From Lytechinus pictus (taxonomy: Eukaryota), in the NCBI RefSeq assembly GCF_037042905.1, contig NC_087261.1, positions 18,414,001 through 18,478,000 of the forward strand: a stretch of 64,000 bases of DNA, given 5' to 3'. Under the pieces are notes generated by a model, which searched no databases, was not told the DNA's origin, and was given only the letters and a program-made list of their open reading frames with translations. How positions within the stretch are numbered: the stretch's first letter is position 1; every line of letters starts with the position of its first letter. Position numbers and translations under genes: made by a program. Of this stretch, positions 1,315-16,289 are shown piece by piece.

Positions 1315-4300
1315 TATTTCTTTTCACATTAGACTTGTACAAGCATATCCTTTCATATTTCTTATAGACAATACAATATAAAAATAGTACATCACTCCTT
1401 ACTAAAACGTTTCGTTCTTGAAACGAAACGTAAAAATGCTTTCTGTATCCCTGGGTCATCTTTTTTTAAATACTCCATTATTTGTCCTGGCTGTGATTCA
1501 TTCAATTCTACAAGGAGCATTGATCTTTCAATTATATATTTTGGACAATGTAAAAGATAATGTCTGACAGTTTCTACCTCAGGACATCTATCACAAAACC
1601 CTGTTGGATGGATCCCTAATCTTAGTAGATCTTGGTTAAGACCAGCGACTCCAAAACGGAGACGATGGAGCACAGTTTCCTGTCTCCCTAGATTACATTT
1701 ATATGTGGATAACACTGATGGTTGCAATTCTTTCAGTGCTGAGTTAGTTTTATTCCATCTTTCTTGCCAAACTATCTTACAACTTTTTGAAATAAGTTGC
1801 ATAATTTCTGATAATGTTATTTGATTATGAATTTCTATTTTGTTTGATAAAACTTTTTTTGCGCAGGAGTCTGCTATTTCATTTCCTTTTATTCCACAGT
1901 GTCCAGGGATCCACTCTAGGTATATATCTAAACCTTTATATTTGAGTCTTGTAGTAATAGTCAGAATTTATGTGATAATAGGATCGTCTTTCCGATTCTG
2001 TAAAGATAAAAGTGCACTTAATGAGTCACTGAAAAAAACAACACCTGTATATATATCTAAATATTCTATCCATTCCAGTGCAAGAATAATCGCAATTAAT
2101 TCCGCCCTATAGGAGGAGGTAAAACTAGATAACCTTTTGCCTTGGTAAAAAGAAAAATAAGGTACATAGAAAGCGGCTAACTTCTTCTTCTTCTTATGTT
2201 GGTTTGAGTGGCGATTAGTCATATTTGACTATTGTCGCCATTGACTCTATTATTACAAAATCTCACTTCTCACATAATGATATTATTACCAATATGATGT
2301 ATACATATATGAAATATTATTCTTGTGTATCCTTCTAATATGAAAAAGGATAATTATGGTATGTACAAAAGTTTGCCGTAACTCTTGTCAAAATGGCATA
2401 TAAACAAATCTTCACCAAAAACAAACCGCTATCTTCAGCTCAGTTCCAACTAGTTGCGCTTGCCCTGCCCTTTCAAAGATGCAATCATGCCGGTCAGCAC
2501 GGTACATTGTGCCGATCTGAATACAACTGAATGTATTTTTACAGCTACTAAAAAAAGGAATCAAAATTTTTATCATAATTGCATGAATATTTACGAATAT
2601 GCATTTTTTTCTCTTTATCCAGGGATTTAATTTAGATCTGGGAAGTAGAAAAGATGATATTCAGATTCTACTTGGACCAAGCAGTGTATGTGATGTGGAT
2701 TACCTTAAAACCGATGTTGTTGGATGCCAGCTACCCGAAGAGAGACCCCTCGCAGGTGATGAGAATGGAACACGCAGTGAAGGAACCACGAGGAACTTAC
2801 CAGCAGTGACGGTAATTCAAGTCTTAACATTTGTTTGTTTGGGGACAGTGCTCTACACAAAACGAGCACATGGTGGATCTTCATCCATTTGTGACCAGTC
2901 ACTCCCAAACCAACAATAATTCACCAAGGAGAGATTTCTGGGTAAATAACCAAAATACTAATTTTCCCTTTTTTAGCTACAAAAATATCTTTATCAGAAA
3001 GAATAATTGATCTTCCTTCAGACTGTCATCATTCTATATAAGTTGTAAAGTTGAATGAAAAAAAAAAGGTTTCATTTGACACCAGTCTTTGCAGACTGCT
3101 CGATTTTTTTTACTAAATTGCACAGTAAGCAAATCTCATGCTTGAGTGATTACAAACTTCAGACCTTGTTTTCTCTTATATTTTTTTCAACTCGTTATTG
3201 TGATGGTTATTCCTAATAAAGTTTGACAAGTTATGCACCATGTTCGAGCTTGGATCTACTACCTTTTCAAGATAAAAAACCATTTGTACATCACTTCAGG
3301 CGACTTCATGGTCTAGGGGTGGCTGATTACATGTATATGCATTTAGATTTCAATTTCTTTAGTCACAATGTGAACGAAACCATCCCGAATGTTATATTAA
3401 CATCTGAGTGTCTCGATTGTTATGTACAAGGGTGTGTACGGTGTATTACGCGCACGAGAAAGTGTAAAGGCTATAGGGGTAAAGGTGAAAATTAGAATGC
3501 GTGAGCTTACGCGCATCAGCAATAGGGTGTAGGTGTGAGTGTTTGTGTGTTGTTTGGGCTGGGTATACGTGTGAGTAATATGGTTTTGCGTGTGTTTGTG
3601 GCTGTGGGTGTTATGTGTGCTGATGTGTCGTTGCGTTTGTAGGTGTGTGCTAGTGGGCAAAACACCGTCAGAGTACTTACTCTGGATAGACAAAGTTTGG
3701 AAGCTTTGAATCGGTTTTATCGCACGAAACTTGTGGCTTACTTGGCATGGTCAAATATTTCAATTATGTTCTAAAGGTGTTACACGGAAACCTAAAGTTC
3801 TATCCGGGATTTGTTTCAGCGTGGCCTACGGAAGGAAACCCGTTGATAGCTACCGTAATACCCACTGTTATTGTATTGCTCATCTTCATCACCATACCTA
3901 CAATTATTCTAGCCTGTTGGTATAGGAAGAAACGGCTTGAAGTGAAACGTGCCAAGGAAGAAGTAGCCATGGTTCGAATGAACATCCTGAAAAGAGTTCG
4001 CGAAGGTATTTAGGGCGTTTTTACTTTCAGTCAATATGTTGCATTTTCCCGTTTGACTAGTCCACGGAGGGAACAATGTATTGCATATGAATTTAAAACA
4101 AAAATAAGTACCTGATGCATGGGATGTAAGAAAAATAGGGGAGGTAAATTCATTTTATTCTGATATTCATTGATATACATTATTATCTCTCTTGAAGTAT
4201 TTCGATCCATCAAGTTTATATAATACTTTACTTTTTGACCAATATAAAATTTATTTAGAACAACAATTCGAATGGAATACGCTTATTTCATTTATAGAAT

Positions 4301-7300
4301 AGGGCGTGTCTTACAGTTCAAATTGACAGCAATATAATGAGACTCGCTTGAAATATATGTTCACCTTCGATCGACTAATTCCTTTGTCTTATGATCAGTC
4401 TCTAGTACAAGTTTAGATATGACGGATGCTGATAACAGAGTTCAGTCTCAAGGAGTTCGTTTTGTGGGGAATGTCCAGTATGTGACACTGATGATGTTTG
4501 CCGGGCTAGGTGTTCACCCAGAAACATCAGATCCAGAGGTATCAATCTATTATTTTCTTTAAATTCTTATCTCTCTTTTTTGTTTTGTTTGTTTAAAGGG
4601 ATTCAAAGTAATAGTACAACAATAATAATATCATTAATAATAATAAAAATAATAATAACAATTATAAATCAAACAATTCATCCAATATAATACAGTGTAA
4701 ACCGTATTGCCCATTCATCGAATACAAGTACATGATCTTGCGGCATACTCCATAGCAAAAAAATATAATTTATGTGAAATATGTTTATTCAAATATGAAA
4801 TCACCGATGTAGGTCTCATTGCCAATGATAGGATTGTAATAGCTTCAGTGATCTGGATATCCAAATGCTCCTGACTTTAACTCATTATTATTCACTCATT
4901 CTTCCTCCAATCATTGGTCTAGTTTTTAAAACATTTTTTTCTTTCTTTCGTATGAAACCAACTGGTTTAAAATCCCTTTGAATCCTACAAAAATTGATAT
5001 ATTCAATATGCTCACTTTATGTTCCCAGTACATGGAAGACTTTATGGAGCATTCAGTTATCGTACTCTACCGAATGCTAAAAAAGAAGGAGAAAATGATA
5101 GAGTTCGTCAGGCAATTGGAAACGAAGAAAACGGGACAAGGTCGAGAAAGGTACGACGGAGTTTTTTTTTTTCTGAAAGTACGTTATGAAAATTAATAAC
5201 CATAAATAATGAATTGACAGCAGTATGATGTCCCGTTGAATTAAGAAGTTGTTTATCATGTTTATGTTTTTCAGTAATTTGTTATGAAAAAATAAGAAGA
5301 AAAAAAGAAGAGAAAACAAAAGCAACTCGGTAGTCAGACCCCATTCGTGAACTCCGTGATTATAACGTTTACTTTTAAATTAATAATAATAGTAATAATG
5401 TAGGTCTATAGCGCATTTCAGACCTGCAGGACTTTACATAAATAATATCATACAATATAAGACATTGCTTAAAATTACACTTAAACTGAACGTCAACATT
5501 AATCAAATACATATGGCACAAGTATAAGGAATTATCTAATTGAATGCTTCATTGAAGAGAAATGTTTTAAGTTGGGATTTGAAAAGTCCGAGATTATTTT
5601 GTGATCGGAGATTACTGGGTAGGGAATTCCAAAGGGCGCTATAGGAGAAAGACCTTTCACCTTGCGTCTTATTTCTTAGTCTAGGTACTTGAAGGAGCTG
5701 TAGGGTGGATGATCTTAGTGTCCTTGAGGGCGTGTATGGAGAAATGAGTTCAGAGATATTTCGAGGCAAGACCGTGGACAGCATTAAATGTTATTACAAG
5801 GACTTTGAAGCGAATTCGTGATTTAATGGGTAGCCAGTGAAGTTCTTTGAGTATTGGTATGATGTGGTTGTGTTTTTTTGATCTGGTGACACGTCTTGCG
5901 GTTGAATATTGAATTCTTTGGAGCTTTGCTATATCTTTGTCCGGGATTCTAGACAAGAGACTTTCACGGTTATCGAGAAGGGAAGACACGAAGGCATGAA
6001 TGAGGGTCTCAGTCACATTCTTACTAAGGTATGACCGAATAATTCCAATACGTCTCAGAGCAACTGAGACCTTGCGACAAAACCATGTTGACGTGTTGGC
6101 GCATGTTTATATTCTTGTAAAAAATGACACTAGATCACATACTGAAGGTAATGGCAGAACCTGGCCATTGACATCAAAGTCAGAGCCTCCTGAACTCGTC
6201 TGAAAGAAGATGAGACATAAAGCACCTCCATTTGGTGTCATTAAGTTTCAGATGATTGCTTACCATCCAGTTCCGTACTTCCTGGAGGCAGATTCCAAGA
6301 CTCCCTATACAACATTCTCCCTTCCTGAAGACTTTAAGGAGAGGCTAAGCCTTGTGTAGAGAAAGCAAGTGCTCGAATAATGTCCTGAACTGGCGTAGTT
6401 TAGCAAATAAAGAGAATCGGACCGATTACTGATCCTTGAGGCACGCCCCAGTCACCCCAGTTCTATACTTTAGTCTAGAAACCAGAATGTCTCGGATAAT
6501 TATTAAGGAAAGCATGCATGTTCTGTTTTCCGGAGTGTGCGTTTGTNNNNNNNNNNNNNNNNNNNNNNNNNNNNNNNNNNNNNNNNNNNNNNNNNNNNNN
6601 NNNNNNNNNNNNNNNNNNNNNNNNNNNNNNNNNNNNNNNNNNNNNNNNNNNNNNNNNNNNNNNNNNNNNNNNNNNNNNNNNNNNACGTTTTTCTGTCACT
6701 ACCTACACTGTAGTTTCCGGATGTGCAAATTTTTACTTGTATGAAAGATTATTTTAAAAAACTCAATAAAAAGTACTGCATGCTCAAGAAATGTTCACCA
6801 TTAATCGGGTACAATGCGCAACAATTACTAACATTAAGACCTACGTTTTTTTTTTACTTTCTTTTTGTAGGGAATTAATTGCATCCCTGTTAGCAATCAC
6901 GTTCGTCAGTGAATGGAATTCAATTGTCTTTACAGAGTAAGTTCATTTTTTCTCACATTTCTTTACATTTAAGCATGTACTATATAATTTTCTTCCGTGG
7001 TTGCACTGTTACAGACTACAGTGCCACAACATATTTTTCCCTCGTTCTATATCCCATGGTCATTTGAATCATCCTAGTTATAGATAAAGGAACAATTAGT
7101 GTTGTCAAAGTTTTACATAAATTTCGACTCGGGCTATGTACACTATTTAACAAGATGTGTCCCTCGTTAGATAAGTGGTGAGACAAATATTAAACAAAAA
7201 TACCACATAAAATTTAAATGTTACGGAAATACCAGAAAAAAAAATTAAGCAAGCTGCATTTGAAAAACGCCCCTAAAAGGTCATTTTGTAAAGAATTACA

Positions 7301-10300
7301 GAGTTATATAAAGTGTATTCTAAATCGAAAGTAATTAACAAATCAAAATAATTCATATACGTTTATAACCATTCCGTTGTGTCCACATCTATGTACAGTC
7401 ATTGATGAAGATCTGTAATCTCCAGAAACAAAAGGAAACTGACAAACCAAATTCAGCAATACAACCAAAATTTCAAATATTCTTGTGCAGCACATTTTAA
7501 AGAAAAGGAAATCTATAAAAATGGCACGCTTGCGTCGAAGAAGAAAACTGGAAGAATATGATCAATGAAATTTTGAGAAAAGTTGGACGAACAATAAGAA
7601 AGCTGAAAGTATTTGACTGTCCACTGCGAAGAAAATTTGATATGACCCCCAAATATTGTACAACACCCCTTTTTTCCTACCCATTCGACACTGAAATCCA
7701 ACAAAACATCTCTTTTGAGGTCTCATAGGACAAATATCTTATCTATGATATAATCATGACAATATTTGAAAACCTGTATTATATGTGCTGATATTGAAAG
7801 AGCACCTGACATTGCGATGGACTAGATGAACGAGAAAAAATAAGTTAAATACATACAGTACTGGGGAAGTTGTACAGATGTGACAACACACAGCTTGGTT
7901 GCATTGCCAGTGTGATGATCTAGAAGCGCGATAGCTCAGTCGGTAGAGCGGGGGATTCGTATTCCGGTGACCCGGGTTCGATTCCCACTTGGTGCGCAAG
8001 TGCCCTTTGGTAAGGCATTAATCCTCATTACCAGGTCCTTCGGAGAGGACCTTAAGCCGTCGGTCATCTGGTTGTTTGCTTACAAGCATTCATGCTTTCT
8101 TAGCAATCAGGTAGAAAATCCCCACCAATCACCAATCTAGAAGCGTGGGCTAGGGCTCTTGGCATAATTAACTTAATGTCTATTGATTCTTATCTTCATG
8201 TTTCATTTATCCCCTTTATTCAATTTTCAGAGTGATGACCGCTCTTGTTGAAGATGAAATCATGGGGGCATCTGAATCCAGAAGGCCTCTGGACAAACTA
8301 TTCACAAAGTAATAAATCAATCCTTGGGTTGGGTTGGGGTTATCATTGTCATGCATGAACGTAATGTACAGTGATTATTAATTTACGTTTAGAGAAAACA
8401 ATAAATCGAACGTCATTATGTCAGAATCATAAAGTCTTATATTAAGCTTTAGGAAGAGACGTCAACTTCGGATACTAAACCAATTCCATTAGTAAAGTCT
8501 AGCATATCGTTGTTATGCAATTATCTTGGACATACATCTAAACTCTGCATCATTACGATTGTATATCCTCTCATTTAAGAACTGAATCGGTCACCGAGAA
8601 ACTGATCAGCAATTGGTTTTCAATCTGCATGTTCGAGTACCTAAAGGTGAGGCCTGTTATTCCCAACTCAAAAAGAAAAAAAATATATATAAAGGTATAT
8701 ACCCAACTTCTTCAGTATCAAATTGTAGTATTAACTTTCAGTTTAACTGAAAATCATAGTTAATGGAGAAAACCAGATTTTTGTAGTTACCAATTTAGCA
8801 TACAACTTGTATATGCTCCTGCACCCAAAATGCACTAGTTTTAGTATTAAATGATCATGGATTAGATTTTTTTTTCCATTTAGGTAAACATGCTCTACGT
8901 ACATAGGTCACTTTCGAAATTTGATCGTGGTATATTGAATGTAGCATTGCGTAATGTTTGGGTTTTTTTTTTTTCCTTTAAGAGAACTTAAAACCAAAAA
9001 TACCTATGAAAAATATGTGTCATGGCTATAAAATAGAATTAATCAATAGCGTAGAACGTAATTAGAAGGTAGTGTATATTGTACACCATTACATTTTTAA
9101 TGTTGAACTCACTCGCGCACAGTTCTTTCTATTTACTTTCTCGTTTCATGTACTGCTTCAGGTATATGGACTCTATTCATTATTCATGCTGTACCAAGCA
9201 ATAAAGACCCAAGCTGAGAAAGGTCCTATAGATGCTGTGACAGGGGTTGCGTACTACACGCTGGAGGCTGATAAACTCATAGATGAAGAGATCGACTTTC
9301 ATTCTCTTGTACGTTCACGGAAATTATGATACTTGAGATTATACTGGTAGCAAAATTCCCGATAGAACAAAAACAATTTTAGTCATATAATATACTTCGG
9401 ACCGTATTTGTATATCATGAGGGGTGTCCTTTTATACTATGGACTTTTTTTAAATGGAGGTCCTCGTCTGAAAAAAAAAAAAATCTTTGATCTCATTGTA
9501 GGTTTAAAAAGTCTCTACGTACATGTAATTAACAATAAAAGCATAAACTCTATGAGCGAACAGTCATATCGTATGTGTTTTTTGGGGTGTGTTTCTTTCT
9601 AGAAAGTCAACAAGAGAAGTACTTTACTGATACCTCAGGTTATACATTTGCAATGAAAATACAGAACTCTAAAAACATATCTTATACTTTCGTTTACATT
9701 GCTATTGATGTAGAACATCGATGTTGTTGATGAAGACGGCCATACCTATGTTCGAGTAAACGTTTTGAATGTTGATACCGTGAAGCAAGCCAAACAGAAG
9801 ATCCTAGATTGCCTTTGGATGAAGGGTTTCTGCCTGCTACCGAGGGATGTTGATGCAGTTGACCTTGGTGAGAATAATAATAATACAGGGCAATCAGAAT
9901 AGGTGTTGAATTTAAGCTGACATAAATTATTTAAAGACGTCTTCTGATACTAACGTAAATTCTGACGCTTATGTAAATTATTTCATGATGCCGAAAATGA
10001 ATATGTATGTACCATTTACAGAAGAGAAGAAAACCCACAATGGTAAAGCACGATAGCTTGAAAGATCAACAAAGTATGTGGTGGAGCCTAGCGTTAGAAG
10101 ACTGAATTGATCAATTCGGAAAAAAGGCGCAATAAACGGACTACCAGAACAAAGGACAGGCGTAGATTAAGCAATAGAGTACCAAGGTGCGACGTCAGTT
10201 GCCATGGTGTCATGACAGGCTGGTTCTAAACAGAGTCGCAGCTGACGATCGTCTGTACATGACTTTGGCTCGTCTGAAAAAAAAAATGCTAGTAGTGATT

Positions 10301-13300
10301 AAATTCCTATAGCAGCCATTTTCTCTTATGGGAAACACACGCTTTCAATCGGCGGGTTCATATGTTTAGACCCAGGCCGCCATGACACCATGGTAACTGA
10401 CGTCATCGCTTCGGTACTCTATTCTGTGTTTAATGAGGAAGGTGTTGATTCTCATGACACAAATTTCGTGGTACCTGTAGGGCCGTAATATTAATCAAAT
10501 TAACTTGAATAGGGATGTTAGGCATTTCGTGTAGGCGTTCTGACTGCCAGTATTTAAATGAAACAGCAGTATAATAAATTCAACTGAAATGCCCGATACA
10601 CAACAACATGGATCATCATTCTGCCGATAAGATCAATACTTCACGTTTCATATTTAGTTATCCAAAGTGAATTTTCGCTCGTATACATTTTTTTAAAGTT
10701 TGGATCGAATCTCCTGAAAGCTATACTTTGCTTCAGGATGTTGACGACATGTCTGAGACACAGAGCAAGGTCATGTTCAATACAATGAAGAGCTACGGGG
10801 TTCGTAATGGTTTCTTCTACCTTATTTTGCGATAACTATTATAAATCCGGATGTTTTATTTACTCACATCATAAGAAAGATGCTCACTCATTTAAGCAAT
10901 TACAAACCTGTAATCATTGTAAGACGGCAGTAAAGTAAGTATGGAGTAAGAATGAGTAAGTAAACTTCAATAATGAGGCATTCTGACGGAATAATTGGAT
11001 TATCCATATCTACCGACGCACGGGTGTTAAAATCACCCACACACAAAAGCGTTCTGTACATGTAAATATATTGACATGGTGCATGGTTGTCAATTTGAAA
11101 TGATTTACTTGAGTTTGATAAGGATCCGCTAATTAATTTCCAAAGCAAATAGGGGCAACAGTTTGTTGATTTGTTTTTGAAGCCAGATCTCCTCACGACG
11201 TGTACTCGTTTGCCAACATGTACCATTTTGTTAATCCTAAAGTTACTGGTCTTGTTTTTTTTTTTACTTTACCCATTACTGTTTTTTGCTGTATCCCTGC
11301 AATATAACTTTAGCGTTCCGAGGAAGATGCGTAATATTGCTTTCAGTTTGTATGCATTGGATTGATATCTTTAGGGAGTACCGATCTACTGAGAGAGAGA
11401 GAGGTTGAATATTGGTACATCGATTTTCAACTGTATTTCATTTATTAGATTAGGAACGGATCTCGTGTTGCACTGGTAGGTAAGAACCAGCTACCGAAAG
11501 CACCTGTCAATGGCTACCAAGCTCTTGATGTCAAAGAATTATCTTCGAACACATGTAAGTAAATACATCTGAATATTTTAAAATGTACCCATCATGACTT
11601 GTGCTAAAAAAAAGGAAATGCCTTCCTTAATCACCTGTGAATCTTCCCAGAGTGAAAAAAACAGACCTTTAAATTTCTAGTCTCGAATGATTTCCATATC
11701 AATATATAGAGAAAATCGTCAAACGTGACATATTACAGCACTCATTGTCGGTAAATGATGAACTCGGTATGAATACTCTCAAGTACAGAGAATTCGACTT
11801 TTTTTAGCCTTGGCTTGTATGTTATCGTCATCTGTTGAAAAAAACCTTTGAATTCATATAAATTTTAATAAATGTTTCCTTCCCCTCCCTCAGATGAATC
11901 CTTGATACCTGTATCAGATGAGACGAATCTTACATCAGGACCATCTCAACTGACTTTGAATGCTGTCCATTTAAAGGTTTTTAGCTAGAATTGTGACATT
12001 TGTATGGTTTTGCGTTGTTTTATCGTGTAGTTGAGAAAATTCGTCTTTTTTTTAATAATAATATTCCGCATTTATATAGCGCTTAACACATCGGAACGAC
12101 GTCTCTAAGCGCTTTACATATATATTATAACCCCGGTCATCGGATCCTTGCATGCCCGCATACAATGTATGTACCTTCTCCACTCCCTGGGGAGCATTCC
12201 AACAAGAGTTCCAAGACTCAATTGCTAGACATACTACATAGGCTTTCGCATTATACCGGGTACCCATTTAACACCTGGGTGGAGAGTGGAAAATTGTGGA
12301 TTGACCCCTTGCCAAAGGACGCTAGGCCATGGTGGGATTCGAACACGCGACCCTCTGATTACAAGGCGAGAGTCAGAACCGCTACACCACAGCGCTTCCA
12401 CACCTCGTACTTATATCAAGAATTATACCATGTTTAATCGCTGGAGCCAAATCCACGTTTGGCATGGGAGGGTGGGCAAAAGTAAATCAGAAATGTCAAA
12501 AATTACAACATTTTACGGATGAAGCTTGCCACAAACATGAAAAGTTTGATAGAAGGAATAGTTTTTTCCAAGTTTAGTTGCCTTATCATGCTTTCCAATA
12601 ATTTCAAGGCTATAATGTATTATGCATTGCTTATTATGATTTTCAAGTTGTAAAAAATATTGGGGAAGGGCAAATCGACATTCCCCGCCCCGGCACAGGA
12701 TCAACTCTGCTTTACTCTTTCTTGACCATATGTATAATTATGAAAATGTAGGCTGTGGTCAATTGAATGCGTAAAGTATGTTTTCGATTAACTGTTTAAA
12801 TCGCCCAGATTGATGCTGAATGGCCAACAAGGAAAGCAGTCAACCTGCCTGATAACATCAAAAGAAAGAGAGCAGAGCTTGATCGGAATCTTGCTATCCC
12901 ACACATGCTTAAAATGAAAGTAAGTTATTGTATCTCCGATGTAATGGTAGTGGAGTCAGCATCGCTTGCTGGAAAGAACACGGTTTATGCCAGAGTGTAT
13001 TCACAGTGTGGAACACAATGTGAAATCACCTTCACACTGCTAAACTTGAATACTGCAACAGCGGGAATCACATACGCACATATAGTCGACCAAGTGAACA
13101 CGCTACACTGTAAAAACTGTGGTATTAAAAATGACACCAATTGGTGTTAATAGAGGAACACACACTGAGGTGTTAAAATTACACCCTAGAGATTAAACAT
13201 AACACCAAAGAGTGTAAATGTATCAACAAAATGTGTTGTAATAACACCTATAGGTGTAAAACGAACACCACCAATTTAACACCGGTGTAAAATAACTGGT

Positions 13301-16289
13301 GTGGTCCTCTATGTACACCGGTTGACACCACAGTTTTTGCTATGTATGAACAGTCATACTGTCAAAGTGTTCACAGTTTGAAAATACATGTATATTCACA
13401 CTGTTGAATCTGGGTGTTTTAAACAGTGGGAATAATAATTCACATCGTCCACTTTGTGACCTTACTGTGATATGCACGACACTGTGTTCTTTCCAGCATG
13501 ACTGTGAGGACACGCAGGGGGATAATCATGATAATGATATGATTGACCGTTGCAATTATATACTTAATTTTTCAATTTTCCATTTCGAAGAAGCGACTGT
13601 TCAGTATGTCGAGATTATGTGTGATAATTACATTTTTTTTTTATACTAGTATTCCCACAGTCTTTGGTGACATTAACTTTTGACGTGAGTACCGATCCAA
13701 AGAAGCCGTTATGACTCGGACCTAATTATTACCATCATTTATCATCAATATATTTATGACCATAAGGCCCTACTATGGTTGTATTTGTTAGCGTCGGAGC
13801 ATTACTCGCATAATCATGATCATCACAATCGCTACCACCACCAACACCTTCATCATTATCACTATAACTATGATAGTTACTCTCTTATCATCATAAAATC
13901 GCATCATTAAATTTGGATGTTGTAATGTCTGTTCAATATCGTTGATTTGTAGGCATCAATAGGTCCATACGTAGATGGAGTCTTTGAGGTTATGTTCAAG
14001 AAACCATCCCGGATCCCTTTACCTGTAAAGCATCTCTTTGACACGTTTGATGACCTTGCCGTCAAATACACCGATGGGAAATCGTCCAAGGAATGCGCGC
14101 AAAATTGGAAGATGAATTGGTGAGCCAAGTTCGATATAGTATTATTATTTTTGTATTACGTTAGATATAATTTTGAAATAAAGCACAACATCAAAATGCA
14201 TCAGTATCAGGGATTTCAGACACACTTATCACACCACCCTATGCTTGAAGTTAAGTGTTTTAAATCTAACCACGAAATTGTGGTTTAAACGCACTTGTAA
14301 TGCAGGCCCATCCGTAATTAAAATGACTCATTGTGCACTAGAGTTGGACTTGATGAGGTTAAATGGCATTTGTTTTGTCTTGTTTGGTCCATCAAGTCCA
14401 AGTCTTTTGTTGGTTGTCCATCCAGGATTTGCGTCATTAACAATTATTTGTATTCATTTACATCCTTTACATCAGATTTTTAAGAGTTTTTTTTTCTCCT
14501 CCTGATCGTTTTTCCATCGTTGGAGCAAAATATAAAAGTAAACCTCAACGCGAAAACTCTGTCAAAAGATAACATAATGTACCTTTTGTTATACGGAGGT
14601 AGCTCTTTCCTGGAAGTGCCAGAATATAATATGTTTTGTTTTATATCTTGTCGTTTGCCCTAATTCACTCTCTTACGTAGCTTGTCTCGCTTCTGGTGTC
14701 AAATACTTACCAACCTACCATCTTTGTTTGACATGCCAAGATCAGAAACGGCTGATCGATGTGTCATCGCTGTTGCTGAAGCCATTACAGATGCAGCTAG
14801 AACCACCACGCTGTCACAGGTAAATATACCCATCACACTATTAATCTTCCAGAAAGTATGTTTGATACCAAGTTGTCTATTCGTTTCGTTTTCTCCTTTA
14901 TTCAATCGATCTACAGAAAAAAAAATCAATATCTTCACCCTCAGTTAATTCCCAGTGTTCTGCATAATTGTCATGTAAAAATAAGCAAATCTTTATGTTG
15001 TTTCATCTATTTTTACTCGCCACCCGCTTTTGACGAAACGTTCAGCGTTGTACTTGTGTTACCTCTGTGTACTATCAAAATTCAACTTGCTCTTGCGTTG
15101 GGATTTCTCCTTGATGAATATTCAGGTGGGGCTATCAAAGATGTGATCACTGGAACGATCGAATAAACACCTCAAATGTGAGCAAAGGGGACCTCATGGA
15201 TAAACAGTGGTATTGTATTAATACCGCTGAAATGGGCCACCCTCCATATGATATGTACGTTATGTCAAATTGAGCATGTATATATTTTATTTTTTATATG
15301 GAAATAAATACAAACAAACAAATACAAACAATTGGAAAATGTCTGCACTCAAACCAATTTATTATACGTTCATTATTTTTTTATGTATGGTCGGCTATTA
15401 TCATTAGAGTGAATCATACCATCTACCCTACTACAAAGAACATCCACTACAGCGACAGATGATGTCTGACTACTGCTCCCTGATATCAAGCCAAGCAAAG
15501 GTCAAGTCAAGACTCAAGTTAACAAGAGCCTGTTCCTCAATCACAAAGGTAAGTTAATTAAAGAATACTTCCCTTTTTATTATTTGTTCTCCGATTGTTT
15601 TAACATGCCAGCCAGAAGGGGAGGAGGTGTGGGTGGGGTCTCAGCAAAAAAATTTCACACAGTCACGTGCTAGTCAGGTTTTTAGACAACTGTTCAAAAT
15701 TACAGTCTAGATTCAAATAATTTTGTCCGTTCCTCCATCCGTCCTTTTTATATGACCTCTTTATTGACAACACAGTGCATCTCAGGTAAAACATTTCTAT
15801 ACATTGGGCCCTTATCTCAGAGCAATTGCTTGGTCAGCCCTTGCTTATACCGCACATGCATGAGTGACATTTCCAACCTTATTTATTATAAATGAATAAT
15901 TCAACATAAGGTAAACATTGTTCAGGTAAAAGTTGTTAAGGTTGCCGAAAATGGTAAGAGAATTCAACAATTTCAATGGATCATTCGGTACATTACCCTT
16001 TTGATAAAGTTTATCCAAAAAAAACCGATCGATTTATTCCTAGTTCTTTAAGAAGGATGAATATTGAAGAAGTAGGATTGAATGAATCGTTACTGGCATT
16101 ACATGTGTGGATTAAGATTCCTGTCGTGTCTGGAGTTAGCCCTTGATTTAACACAATGTTCCTATTTCATTTTTTTCTTTCATTTAATCATGTTCCCTTT
16201 AGGAGTTCAAAGGTCATTTTAGTCACCTTTCGAATTTGCTGCACCTTTACAACCTAACCAAGGATGACGTAGAGGGCCTCTTGAAATAA
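11..16289 (+). CDS. Plexin-like gene 1, 3' part (IPT-IPT-TM-GAP/RBD); 18 exons, 5' end outside the window
   Basis: Exons 11-250, 2623-2811, 3777-4005, 4399-4538, 5029-5150, 6871-6936, 8231-8308, 8580-8646, 9162-9308, 9714-9867, 10699-10799, 11449-11554, 11894-11976, 12809-12919, 13953-14119, 14681-14819, 15408-15548, 16203-16289. All introns are GT-AG, phases match and there are no internal stops. Plexin motifs are collinear: [54 protein letters not shown]. Confidence 0.93.
733..2516 (-). mobile_element. 5'-truncated I/Nimb-type non-LTR retrotransposon (RNase H, C-terminal CCHC) with a duplicated 339-bp 3' end
   Basis: Minus-strand SSYRAELIAI, FSDSLSAL, WIPGHCGIKGNEIAD and C..C...ETVRHYLLHC; frameshifted; (GAA)n tail; direct repeats 733-1071 and 2178-2516. 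Confidence 0.85.
1277..1316. repeat. (AT)n microsatellite in the LINE 3' UTR
   Basis: Direct reading. Confidence 0.95.
2623..2811 (+). CDS. Plexin-like 1 exon, last IPT domain
   Basis: GFNLDLGSRKDDIQILLGPSSVCDVDYLKTDVVGCQLPEE...LPAVT; phase 0/0. Confidence 0.88.
3777..4005 (+). CDS. Plexin-like 1 exon, transmembrane helix and juxtamembrane segment
   Basis: VLHGNLKFYPG...LIATVIPTVIVLLIFITIPTIILACW-YRKKR: hydrophobic run followed by a basic stop-transfer sequence. Confidence 0.9.
4399..4538 (+). CDS. Plexin-like 1 exon, start of GAP C1
   Basis: LDMTDADNRVQSQGVRFVGNVQYVTLMMFAGLGVHP aligns with plexin DMTDL...GIPFLDY..Y...LFPG..HP. Confidence 0.85.
5029..5150 (+). CDS. Plexin-like 1 exon, GAP C1
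   Basis: YMEDFMEHSVIVLYRMLKKKEKMIEFVRQLETKKTGQGRER resembles plexin F..FIRTLE.Q..FS.RDR. Confidence 0.83.
5378..6420 (-). mobile_element. Degenerate L2/CR1-group LINE, RT C-terminus and 3' tail
   Basis: ETLIHAFVSS.LD...LQRIQ..ARR.T...HI.PILKELHWLPI; frameshifts; TAA-rich tail. Confidence 0.85.
6547..6684. other. Assembly gap (N run)
   Basis: Run of n characters. Confidence 0.99.
6871..6936 (+). CDS. Plexin-like 1 exon, GAP C1
   Basis: RELIASLLAITFVSEWNSIVFTE resembles RGNVASLIM; polypyrimidine tract + ag, gtaagt donor. Confidence 0.83.
7925..8134 (+). mobile_element. tRNA-derived SINE
   Basis: A box TAGCTCAGTCGG, B box GGTTCGATTCCC, non-tRNA body, direct repeat ATCTAGAAGCG at 7918 and 8135. 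Confidence 0.85.
8231..8308 (+). CDS. Plexin-like 1 exon ending at the arginine-finger position
   Basis: VMTALVEDEIMGASESRRPLDKLFT(K); phase 2/2. Confidence 0.8.
8580..8646 (+). CDS. Plexin-like 1 exon, GAP C1
   Basis: [23 protein letters not shown] resembles RTESVAEKMLTNW. Confidence 0.9.
9162..9308 (+). CDS. Plexin-like 1 exon, GAP-RBD linker
   Basis: [34 protein letters not shown], a plexin hallmark. Confidence 0.93.
9714..9867 (+). CDS. Plexin-like 1 exon, Rho-GTPase binding domain
   Basis: [26 protein letters not shown]...DAVDL resembles VKVLNCDTITQVKEKILD. Confidence 0.9.
10173..10423. mobile_element. MITE with ~55-bp imperfect TIRs
   Basis: aatagagtacc...gacgtcagttgccatggtgtcatg mirrored by catgacaccatggtaactgacgtc...ggtactctatt. 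Confidence 0.75.
10699..10799 (+). CDS. Plexin-like 1 exon, RBD
   Basis: VWIESPESYTLLQDVDD...FNTMKSYG resembles EW....LQDED...LNTLAHY. Confidence 0.85.
11449..11554 (+). CDS. Plexin-like 1 exon, RBD end and variable loop
   Basis: IRNGSRVALVGKNQLPKAPVNGYQALDVKELSSNT; donor gtaagt at 11555, with an in-phase alternative donor after 11479. Confidence 0.8.
11894..11976 (+). CDS. Plexin-like 1 exon, variable loop
   Basis: (Y)ESLIPVSDETNLTSGPSQLTLNAVHLK; VHLK corresponds to plexin WHLVK. Confidence 0.75.
12052..12402 (-). mobile_element. tRNA-headed SINE with Deu-domain-like core and L2-like tail
   Basis: Minus strand: TGGTGTAGCGG ... GTTCGAATCCC head, CCACCCAGGTGTTAAATGGGTACC core, AAGCGCTATATAAAT tail ending in (TAT)n. 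Confidence 0.8.
12809..12919 (+). CDS. Plexin-like 1 exon
   Basis: IDAEWPTRKAVNLPDNIKRKRAELDRNLAIPHMLKMK resembles EIYLTRLL.MK; cag/gtaagt. Confidence 0.78.
12967..13498. mobile_element. MITE containing a nested MITE (~13104-13346)
   Basis: Outer TIR tgctggaaagaacac / gtgttctttccagca; inner tacactgtaaaaactgtgg / ccacagtttttgctatgta with ACACC subrepeats. Confidence 0.7.
13953..14119 (+). CDS. Plexin-like 1 exon, GAP C2
   Basis: YVDGVFEVMF...IPLPVKHLFDTFDDLA...NWKMNC resembles FVDDLF...LPLAIKYMFDFLD.QA...WKSNC. Confidence 0.9.
14681..14819 (+). CDS. Plexin-like 1 exon, GAP C2
   Basis: LSRFWCQILTNLPSLFDMPRSETADRCVIAVAEAITDA resembles LPLRFWVN..KNPQFVFD....DACL.VVAQ.FMD. Confidence 0.9.
15408..15548 (+). 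CDS. Plexin-like 1 exon
   Basis: SESYHLPYYKEHPLQRQMMSDYCSLISSQAKV resembles LLYAKDIP.YK..V..YY.DI. Confidence 0.78.
16203..16289 (+). CDS. Plexin-like 1 terminal coding exon
   Basis: EFKGHFSHLSNLLHLYNLTKDDVEGLLK* resembles F...AL.ELY.Y..KY..EI. Confidence 0.75.
   Translation, partial: EFKGHFSHLSNLLHLYNLTKDDVEGLLK

What the first reader, a model, noticed from the sequence alone, without database searches (positions are those of the whole stretch)
11449..11904. ITAM-like motif in a plexin tail that an in-phase alternative donor would remove
Seen: splicing 11449-11554 to 11894 gives NG-YQAL-DVKELSSNT-YESL (YxxL-x9-YxxL) in the variable loop after the RBD; the second Tyr codon is split by the intron (t|at). 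A second consensus donor, AG|GTAAGA after 11479, is also phase 1. Using it deletes 75 nt including the first Tyr and turns the second into Asp (g|at), leaving the frame intact. Known: YxxL/I-x6-12-YxxL/I motifs recruit tandem-SH2 kinases of the Syk/ZAP70/Shark type, and ITAMs are not a standard feature of plexin tails. Inference: this may be a plexin repurposed as a tyrosine-signalling, possibly immune, receptor with plus/minus-ITAM isoforms.
Basis: partly seen in the sequence, partly recalled or inferred. Interest (0 to 1): 0.8.

Follow-up and report, generated by a model that had tools for sequence, protein, structure and literature searches.

The report
Conserved ITAM-like motif in urchin plexins
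Two ordinary coding exons of a sea urchin (Lytechinus pictus) plexin-like gene encode a paired-tyrosine motif, YxxL-x9-YxxL, that is kept unchanged across a whole urchin-specific plexin clade and so looks like a real signalling site, while the proposed splice switch that would remove it has no support.

Summary
Exon 11449-11554 joins 11894 through a GT..AG intron. The junction is seen in RNA, and the spliced reading is exactly RefSeq XP_063968530.1 of Lytechinus pictus. It encodes YQAL-DVKELSSNT-YESL just after the Rho-GTPase-binding domain, with the second Tyr codon split T|AT.

One such match means little: 11% of shuffled tails contain one. Conservation is the real evidence. Both Tyr, both +3 Leu and the 9-residue spacer are invariant in eight sequences from Lytechinus, Strongylocentrotus and Diadema, while the spacer residues and loop length vary. 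This clade is monophyletic, urchin-only in my searches, and has lost the catalytic arginine pair of the plexin GAP domain. AlphaFold2 gives the loop very low confidence, consistent with disorder. In L. pictus the genes form a 17-gene tandem array with diverse Sema exons and near-identical tails.

The alternative donor after 11479 exists, but nothing supports its use. No junction read and no annotated isoform uses it. Its GT is GA in 3 of 9 paralogues, and two more distant homologues checked lack it.

Best reading: a constitutive phosphotyrosine docking motif, most likely ITAM-like and read by a tandem-SH2 protein. Phosphorylation and Syk binding are untested. I know of no earlier description of the motif.

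The parts
11449..11554 (+). Coding exon of 106 nt. It encodes the end of the RBD (IRNGSRVALVGK), the start of the loop, the first YQAL and the spacer DVKELSSNT. Its last base, T, is the first base of the second Tyr codon.
   Evidence: Sequence. RNA joints 10799>11449 and 11554>11894. Exact match to XP_063968530.1.
11515..11526 (+). First YxxL (TAC CAA GCT CTT = Y Q A L).
   Evidence: Tyr and +3 Leu are invariant in 8 clade sequences.
11480..11485 (+). In-frame cryptic donor GTAAGA inside the exon (codons GGT AAG = G K). No evidence that it is used.
   Evidence: No 11479>11894 joint. GT is GA in copies L035, L038 and L039. No short-form isoform is annotated.
11555..11893 (+). Phase-1 intron of 339 nt (GTAAGT...CAG) that splits the second Tyr codon.
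   Evidence: joint 11554>11894. The same split codon occurs in the C3 paralogue (T|AT) and in Diadema setosum (T|AC).
11894..11976 (+). Coding exon of 83 nt. AT completes the Tyr codon, followed by ESLIPVSDETNLTSGPSQLTLNAVHLK. The second YxxL is 11554 plus 11894-11904.
   Evidence: Joints 11554>11894 and 11976>12809.
9162..10799 (+). Three upstream exons (9162-9308, 9714-9867, 10699-10799). They encode the end of the first GAP-like half and most of the RBD.
   Evidence: RNA joints, translation, Pfam Plexin_RBD on P0176 residues 730-838. The start at 9162 is inferred from the acceptor AG and the reading frame.
12809..16289 (+). Downstream exons of the second GAP-like half: 12809-12919, 13953-14119, about 14682-14819, about 15408-15548, and 16203-16289 including the stop codon.
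   Evidence: The first two come from RNA joints. The rest come from tblastn of P0176 at 100% identity. Stop codon.
3777..4004 (+). Exon with the transmembrane helix (LIATVIPTVIVLLIFITIPTIILACW). It places the motif in the cytoplasm.
8232..8649 (+). Two exons (8232-8309, 8578-8649) spanning the site of the catalytic arginine pair. It reads LFTKTES where canonical plexins read LLRRTES.
   Evidence: P0176 residue 671. Clade comparison.

Best explanation
The stretch is two constitutive coding exons of a Lytechinus pictus plexin-like gene (RefSeq XP_063968530.1). It is one of nine near-identical 'type-1' genes in a 17-gene tandem array.

Shown:
- The exons are spliced 11554>11894 and encode YQAL-x9-YESL, starting 10 residues after the RBD's closing ...RVALVGK, in a loop that AlphaFold2 models with very low confidence.
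- Both Tyr, both +3 Leu, a Ser at -3 of the second Tyr and the 9-residue spacing are invariant in a monophyletic plexin clade found only in sea urchins in my searches (Lytechinus, Strongylocentrotus, Diadema).
- That clade has lost the catalytic arginine pair.

Inferred: the two tyrosines are phosphorylated, probably by a Src-family kinase once the receptor is clustered. Together they then act as one two-pronged docking site of the ITAM type for a protein with tandem SH2 domains. The sea urchin Syk/ZAP70 homologue is the obvious candidate. This would give a GAP-impaired plexin a tyrosine-kinase output.

The in-frame donor after 11479 is a by-product of the codons GTA GGT AAG, not a regulated switch.
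For: Splicing and identity.

Conservation:
- L. pictus type 1: YQAL-DVKELSSNT-YESL
- L. variegatus: YQAL-YVKELSSNT-YESL
- L. pictus C3 paralogue: YQTL-DLKEVSSDK-YESL
- S. purpuratus: YQTL-DLKEVSS[EK]T-YESL and YQAL-DLKEVASDK-YVSL
- Diadema setosum: YQEL-VPSTFLSNK-YESL and YFQL-VSSALLSKR-YENL

Only 5 of 23 aligned columns are invariant, and they are Y, L, S, Y, L. The chance that the four named positions all fall in that set is about 6e-4; the test was chosen after seeing the data.

The loop tolerates indels: the segment before the motif is 5-10 residues long. The Tyr-Tyr spacer is always 9. A fixed spacing is what a two-site reader would require.

All 16 +3 residues are Leu, never V, I, M or F.

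The older paralogues show purifying selection on these exons: 0.5-3.7% exon divergence against 9.9-13.1% in the intron.

AlphaFold2 gives pLDDT below 50 for residues 337-344 and 346-400 of the tail; the motif is residues 346-362.

The clade is monophyletic (100/100) on a long stem branch. Its arginine-pair site reads LFTKTES, LFTNTES/T, LFINTET or LFGRSKS.

Syk/ZAP70 homologues are annotated in S. purpuratus and L. variegatus (PMC13344425). Invertebrate ITAM receptors read by Syk-family kinases are established for Draper/Shark and Megf10/Syk (PMC8092387).
Against: No phosphorylation, binding or cell-type data exist.

The spacer is 9 residues, one more than the canonical 6-8. It fits only the extended 6-12 definition.

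Acidic residues before the first Tyr are missing in the L. pictus type-1 copies (PVNGY).

Class-A plexins have tyrosines in the same loop at non-ITAM spacing (x12), and one of them appears to be a Fyn site. The urchin motif could therefore be a tightened version of an ordinary plexin phosphosite.

Conservation of Y, L and spacing would also fit another bidentate or structural partner.

Low pLDDT suggests disorder but does not prove it.

The RNA evidence is thin (one contig, two reads) and is family-level. The X1 contig carries T at 11924, the variant of another copy.

The window's own copy has an N-terminally truncated gene model and may not be functional.
Confidence: 0.45

Rival explanations
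1. The two tyrosines are independent Src/Fyn-type phosphosites, as in vertebrate class-A plexins. Each recruits an ordinary single-SH2 or PTB protein or modulates the RBD/GAP conformation. There is no Syk-type two-pronged reader.
For: Turtle Plexin-A4 has YNAV-x12-YENM in the same loop. HMMER aligns the urchin YESL with the YESM of mouse Plexin-A1, 3RYT. Y1605 and Y1677 of Plexin-A2 are Fyn-dependent sites (PMC9852426, citing St Clair et al. 2018). The Tyr-Tyr distance of 72 in P0171 places Y1605 at TAYNAV in this loop.
Against: Independent sites would not need a fixed spacer, yet it is 9 in all eight sequences while the rest of the loop gains and loses residues. The di-Tyr clade is not orthologous to class-A plexins. 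Its nearest relatives (type-2 clade, Dset_A1l, Sp_A2_1909) lack the pattern, so homology with the class-A tyrosines is uncertain.
Confidence: 0.2
2. The YxxL pair are tyrosine-based sorting signals (YxxPhi) read unphosphorylated by AP-2 or other adaptor mu subunits. They would control endocytosis or trafficking of the receptor.
For: YxxL in an exposed cytoplasmic loop of a single-pass receptor fits the sorting consensus (established knowledge). The loop is modelled with low confidence.
Against: Sorting signals accept L, I, M, F or V at +3 and have no spacing rule. Here all 16 +3 residues are Leu and the spacing is fixed. Two signals 13 residues apart would be redundant.
Confidence: 0.15
3. The conserved residues have a structural or intramolecular role. 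For example, the segment could pack against the GAP-like domain or the RBD, and tyrosine phosphorylation is irrelevant.
For: Aromatic and Leu residues at fixed spacing can mark an amphipathic element. AlphaFold2 draws a short helix at 351-354.
Against: That helix has pLDDT around 30 and the whole of 346-400 is below 50. The spacer residues between the anchors are not conserved between Diadema and the other urchins. That is unusual for a packed element.
Confidence: 0.1
4. One reading: the donor after 11479 is used in some cell types, giving isoforms with and without the motif.
For: TAG|GTAAGA matches the donor consensus as well as or better than several real donors of this gene, such as GTTCGT and GTTTTT. 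The product stays in frame. Read depth was too low to exclude a minor isoform.
Against: No joint 11479>11894 in four runs. No short form among the 16 RefSeq models that cover the loop. GT is GA in 3 of 9 paralogues, synonymous in the long frame. The donor is absent from the C3 paralogue and the Diadema homologue. Using it would leave a 31-nt exon, which is poorly recognised in general (established knowledge of exon definition).
Confidence: 0.05
5. A chance match with no function.
For: 11% of shuffled tails contain an ITAM-like match. Plexin tails contain a spurious match in a folded helix.
Against: The invariance of exactly the four defining residues and of the spacing across Lytechinus, Strongylocentrotus and Diadema.
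Confidence: 0.03

Closest known systems
Canonical ITAMs (FcR gamma, DAP12, CD3, Ig-alpha/beta) and invertebrate ITAM receptors Draper and Megf10, read by Syk/ZAP70/Shark
   Same: Two YxxL in a flexible cytoplasmic segment of a single-pass receptor, at a fixed short distance. The second half, T-Y-E-S-L, and the Diadema first half, G-Y-Q-E-L, look like FcR gamma and DAP12 halves (comparison from memory). The writer-reader scheme of a Src-family kinase followed by a tandem-SH2 kinase is documented for Draper and Megf10 (PMC8092387).
   Different: The spacer is 9, not 6-8. The motif sits inside a large folded plexin tail, between the RBD and the second GAP half, not in a short dedicated tail or adaptor chain. 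No phosphorylation or Syk binding has been shown.
Vertebrate class-A plexin loop tyrosines (Plexin-A2 Y1605, a Fyn site; the YENM/YESM element)
   Same: Same place in the protein: the loop between ...VALVxK and WHLVK. The YES[LM] element is aligned by HMMER. Tyrosine phosphorylation of this region is known to matter for signalling (PMC9852426).
   Different: The spacing is x12 in class-A plexins (counted in turtle Plexin-A4) and the +3 residues are V, S or M, so there is no ITAM pattern. Class-A plexins keep the catalytic arginines. The urchin clade is not their orthologue.
Plexin-A1-TREM2-DAP12 complex
   Same: A plexin coupled to ITAM signalling in immune and bone cells (PMC10701534, citing Takegahara et al. 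2006).
   Different: There the ITAM is supplied in trans by the adaptor DAP12. Here the ITAM-like motif is part of the plexin chain itself.
Echinoderm plexin expansion and Met-LP receptors (Junqueira Alves et al. 2019, PMC6374515)
   Same: Lineage-specific multiplication of plexin genes in echinoderms, and plexin ectodomains re-coupled to tyrosine-kinase signalling (Met-LP), have been described.
   Different: That work does not describe this urchin clade's arginine loss, its di-tyrosine motif or the 17-gene L. pictus array. I searched that paper for echinoderm, expansion and duplication terms only, not for tyrosine motifs.

Membership tests
ITAM | Two YxxL/I motifs in the cytoplasmic part of a membrane receptor or adaptor | tested here: met
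   YQAL and YESL lie downstream of the TM exon and are conserved in 8 clade sequences.
ITAM | Spacer of 6-8 residues (canonical); 6-12 in the extended definition | tested here: inconclusive
   The spacer is 9 in every sequence. That is outside the canonical range and inside the extended one. From memory, functional ITAMs with longer spacers exist (Fc gamma RIIA, x12).
ITAM | Flexible, accessible segment | tested here: met
   AlphaFold2 pLDDT below 50 for residues 337-344 and 346-400, motif at 346-362. This is a prediction only.
ITAM | Acidic residues just before the first Tyr | tested here: inconclusive
   D or E lies within 5 residues before the first Tyr in 6 of 8 sequences (DEY, GDGY, ADSSGY, ADSRGY). 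It is absent in the L. pictus and L. variegatus type-1 copies (PVNGY).
ITAM | Both tyrosines phosphorylated by a Src-family kinase | not testable with these tools
   Needs phosphoproteomics or an in vitro kinase assay.
ITAM | Doubly phosphorylated motif binds the tandem SH2 of Syk/ZAP70/Shark | not tested
   A Syk-family gene is annotated in sea urchins (PMC13344425). No urchin Syk sequence could be obtained, so no complex prediction was run.
Plexin | Sema-PSI-IPT ectodomain, one TM helix, Plexin_cytopl with an inserted RBD | tested here: met
   Pfam on the full-length paralogue P0179 finds Sema, PSI, TIG_plexin, TIG_2, TIG, Plexin_RBD and Plexin_cytopl. The window's own model, P0176, has TIG, RBD and Plexin_cytopl only. 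Exon-level match.
Plexin | Catalytic arginine pair of the GAP domain (LLRRTES) | tested here: not met
   It reads LFTKTES in the window's protein, and LFTNTES/T, LFINTET and LFGRSKS in the rest of the clade. The third arginine (RFW) is kept in L. pictus type 1.
Regulated alternative 5' splice site | Junction reads or annotated isoforms for both donors, and conservation of the alternative donor | tested here: not met
   Only 11554>11894 is seen. There is no short isoform. The donor GT is lost in 3 of 9 copies and absent in the more distant homologues. Read depth was low.

The most novel reading that the evidence does not exclude
Sea urchins have evolved a family of plexin-derived recognition receptors. 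The family is GAP-dead, tandemly multiplied and has highly diversified Sema ectodomains. It carries its own ITAM-like motif and signals through Syk. That would make it an invertebrate immune or self/non-self receptor system built on a plexin scaffold. A hemichordate plexin-ectodomain protein with a short tail of repeated YxxL-x8-YxxL units would be an independent second case.
Probability: 0.25. Interest if true: 0.85.

Novelty: new variant of a known kind. Interest (0 to 1): 0.6.

Why it matters
Plexins are thought to signal mainly through their own GAP domain. When they use ITAM signalling, it is through a separate adaptor (DAP12).

A plexin clade that has lost the catalytic arginines but has kept a precisely spaced YxxL pair since Diadema and Lytechinus lineages split would be the first plexin with a built-in ITAM-type output. 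From memory, that split is on the order of 200 million years old.

The genes also sit in a large tandem array with diverse ectodomains and homogenised tails. That points to a lineage-specific receptor family, possibly for immunity or cell recognition, in an animal known for expanded innate immune gene families.

The idea can be tested directly with peptides and recombinant Syk SH2 domains.

The splice-switch part of the idea does not hold on the present data.

Tried and rejected
- **More genomic DNA.** I used RefSeq proteins of the same genes instead.
- **Primary paper.** St Clair et al. 2018, the primary paper for Y1605/Y1677, is not held. The sites are cited through PMC9852426, and I placed them by residue distance only.
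- **Transcript fragments.** A search with P0179:1555-1700 for short-isoform or further-species fragments returned one irrelevant L. pictus fragment.
- **Relatives outside sea urchins.** The tail-region search found only sea urchin relatives. The word prefilter means that absence elsewhere is not shown.
- **Complex prediction.** No complex prediction with Syk tandem SH2 was run, because no urchin Syk sequence could be obtained.
- **ITIM reading rejected.** The residues at -2 of the tyrosines are N, D, S, R, E or K, not consistently I, V, L or S.
- **Paralogue identity alone rejected as evidence.** The 100% identity of the motif exon among seven of the nine L. pictus copies is not evidence of selection by itself, because the introns are 89-99% identical too.
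- **Transcribed repeat.** Rfam and tRNA scans of the heavily transcribed repeat at 11944-12495 found nothing.
Full report
**1. What is at the coordinates**

The window is G000:C17:18414001-18478000.
- An exon starts at 11449 and ends at 11554 before GTAAGT. The next exon starts at 11894.
- The frame gives ...IRNGSRVALVGKNQLPKAPVNG-YQAL-DVKELSSNT-Y(T|AT)ESL-IPVSDE...
- A second donor, TAG|GTAAGA, follows 11479 in the same phase. Using it would delete 25 codons and give RVALV-D-ESLIP in frame.

**2. RNA evidence**

My single read-laying run covered 9000-14500 with three raw RNA runs and one set of contigs.
- It shows GT..AG joints at 9308>9714, 9867>10699, 10799>11449, 11554>11894, 11976>12809 and 12919>13953.
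- The 11554>11894 joint is carried by one spliced X1 contig (depth 164) and by one raw read each in X16 and X17.
- No run shows 11479>11894.
- Depth in the raw runs is only about 0.3-2x, and contigs drop rare variants. A minor isoform is therefore not excluded.
- The X1 contig has T at 11924, the variant of another gene copy (L037). The RNA evidence is thus for the gene family, not specifically for this copy.

**3. Which gene**

The spliced translation of the RNA-defined exons (289 aa) is found exactly in XP_063968530.1, 'plexin-A1-like' of Lytechinus pictus (P0176, residues 697-985). The genome is therefore L. pictus or something indistinguishable from it.
- Pfam places the RBD at residues 730-838 and the motif begins at residue 853.
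- Sixteen of the RefSeq models checked cover this loop (L. pictus, L. variegatus, S. purpuratus). All carry the long form and none has ALV-D-ESL.

**4. Genomic context**

Plexin_cytopl matches and Sema-exon matches show 17 plexin-like genes in tandem on C17 between 17.12 and 18.52 Mb. Two tail types mostly alternate along the array.
- The motif exon occurs in nine copies. It is 100% identical in protein in seven of them, and the introns are 89-99% identical in DNA.
- The Sema first exons of the array genes are only 55-93% identical in protein apart from one 99% pair, with medians of 65-70%. They do not sort by tail type.
- The tails are therefore homogenised or recently copied, while the ectodomains are diverse.
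- A further cluster lies on C3 at 13.02-13.16 Mb. Canonical plexins lie elsewhere on C3.

**5. Is the motif more than chance?**

A single match is not.
- The loose pattern Y..[LI].{6,12}Y..[LI] appears in 11% of shuffles of this tail, and the exact x9/Leu form in 0.8%.
- Canonical plexins match the loose pattern inside a folded helix.

Comparison across genes and species is the test that matters. The sequences are:

| Source | Motif |
|---|---|
| L. pictus type 1 | YQAL-DVKELSSNT-YESL |
| L. variegatus | YQAL-YVKELSSNT-YESL |
| L. pictus C3 paralogue | YQTL-DLKEVSSDK-YESL |
| S. purpuratus (two variants) | YQTL-DLKEVSS[EK]T-YESL |
| S. purpuratus (third) | YQAL-DLKEVASDK-YVSL |
| Diadema setosum (first) | YQEL-VPSTFLSNK-YESL |
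| Diadema setosum (second) | YFQL-VSSALLSKR-YENL |

- The first Diadema case comes from exons that the public gene model skips. I found them in the genomic locus, and the Tyr codon is split in the same way (T|AC).
- In a 23-column ungapped alignment only five columns are invariant: Tyr, Leu, Ser, Tyr, Leu.
- The loop before the motif varies from 5 to 10 residues, but the spacer is always 9.
- Diadema belongs to the order Diadematoida. Lytechinus belongs to Echinacea. From memory, this split is roughly 200 million years old.
- Against the older paralogues, these exons differ by 0.5-3.7% while the intron differs by 9.9-13.1%.

**6. The clade**

A maximum-likelihood tree of 22 cytoplasmic domains gives these results.
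- The di-tyrosine sequences are monophyletic (100/100) on a long stem branch of 1.04 changes per site.
- They are sister to the 'type-2' clade.
- Both are apart from the class-A plexins of vertebrates, insects, molluscs and amphioxus.
- All members of the di-tyrosine clade have lost the catalytic arginine pair. The site reads LFTKTES, LFTNTES/T, LFINTET or LFGRSKS instead of LLRRTES. This confirms and extends another first-stage note.
- The sister clade keeps LFRRTET but has HYW for RFW. Its loop reads YxPV ... YxR[VI], 21-22 residues apart, which is not an ITAM pattern.

**7. Structure**

AlphaFold2 on the tail of the full-length paralogue P0179, with a 22-sequence alignment, gave mean pLDDT 73.7.
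- The GAP-like halves and the RBD are modelled with confidence.
- Residues 337-344 and 346-400 score below 50.
- The motif is residues 346-362.
- The segment is therefore predicted to be flexible and accessible.

**8. Relation to known plexin biology**

The same loop of class-A plexins carries tyrosines.
- Turtle Plexin-A4 has YNAV-x12-YENM.
- Mouse Plexin-A1 (3RYT) has AYNIS...RYESM, and HMMER aligns the urchin YESL with its YESM.
- Y1605 and Y1677 of Plexin-A2 are Fyn-dependent sites needed for some Plexin-A2 functions (PMC9852426, citing St Clair et al. 2018).
- The 72-residue distance between TAYNAV and SEIYLTRLL in P0171 places Y1605 in this loop. That is my inference.

So tyrosine phosphorylation of this loop has precedent, but the ITAM-like geometry does not. 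Other links to ITAM signalling:
- Plexin-A1 uses ITAM signalling only in trans, through TREM2-DAP12 (PMC10701534).
- Invertebrate ITAM receptors read by Syk-family kinases are established: Draper with Src42a and Shark, and Megf10 with Syk (PMC8092387).
- Sea urchin Syk/ZAP70 homologues are annotated (PMC13344425).
- The echinoderm plexin expansion has been noted before (PMC6374515).
- My literature searches found no description of this motif.

**9. The alternative donor**

By sequence it is a good donor, but the other evidence is against its use.
- It has no read support and no annotated isoform.
- Its GT is GA in copies L035, L038 and L039, a change that is synonymous (GGT to GGA) in the long reading.
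- The C3 paralogue and the Diadema homologue lack it.
- Using it would leave a 31-nt exon.
- I read it as a by-product of the codons for Val-Gly-Lys.

**10. Verdict**

The isoform switch is not supported.

The most likely mechanism is a constitutive, phosphorylation-dependent, two-site docking motif of the ITAM type in a GAP-impaired plexin (about 0.45). The rivals are independent Fyn-type sites (0.2), sorting signals (0.15) and a structural role (0.1).

The window's own copy may be defective at its 5' end. Its Sema exon, upstream of the window, reads in two frames, and the RefSeq model is N-terminally truncated.

Noticed in passing
G000:C17:17.12-18.52 Mb (window 1-64000 holds the 3' part of one gene and, from 29765, the 5' part of the next): There are 17 plexin-like genes in tandem, with two tail types mostly alternating. 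The Sema first exons are 55-93% identical in protein apart from one 99% pair (medians 65-70%) and do not sort by tail type. Type-1 tail exons are about 90-100% identical, with introns up to 99% identical. This suggests diversification of the ectodomains together with gene conversion or recent copying of the tails.
   Followed up: partly
window 11926-11960 (exon 11894-11976, distal part): Among near-identical copies, codon CTT (N-L-T) reads L, P, R or H, and SQLTL alternates with SLQTL and SQLAL. Against the two youngest copies the exons differ more (1.6-2.1%) than the intron (0.2%). All these changes lie after the motif. The numbers are small. The cause could be a gene-conversion patchwork or diversifying selection.
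   Followed up: partly
P0091 (XP_077988586.1, Glandiceps talaboti) and P0063 (XP_070557607.1, Ptychodera flava): P0091 is a hemichordate 'plexin-B-like' protein with a full plexin ectodomain (Sema, PSI, TIG) and no Plexin_cytopl domain. Its short tail carries YEEL-x8-YEQL, YEDI-x8-YEGL and repeated YEGL-x8-YEGL. The P. flava protein keeps a plexin tail and adds YQPL-x7-YKSL near its C-terminus. These may be independent cases of plexin ectodomains coupled to ITAM-like motifs.
   Followed up: partly
window 11944-12495: An interspersed repeat in the intron after the motif exons is covered up to about 1,900-fold on one strand in three RNA runs. Many differences from the window are fixed, so the reads come from other copies. 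Many reads start at 12066. There is no Rfam or tRNA match.
   Followed up: partly
G000:C17:18365972-18366977 (about 48 kb upstream of the window): The Sema first exon of the window's own gene matches in two pieces in different frames, separated by about 20 nt. The RefSeq model (1107 aa) lacks the Sema domain. This copy may be a pseudogene, or the assembly may have an indel error.
   Followed up: no
L084:18883-18987 and L084:19413-19521 (Diadema setosum, OZ188187.1): The public gene model P0161 skips two real exons (the second half of the RBD and the first YxxL) and joins ...ESLDV directly to D-ESL. The exons are present and intact in the genomic DNA.
   Followed up: yes
window 8232-8649: The site of the catalytic arginine pair reads LFTKTES, as another first-stage note says. 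The loss is shared by the whole di-tyrosine clade, including Diadema. The sister clade instead changes the third arginine (RFW to HYW).
   Followed up: yes
window 6547-6684: A run of 138 N in an intron.
   Followed up: no
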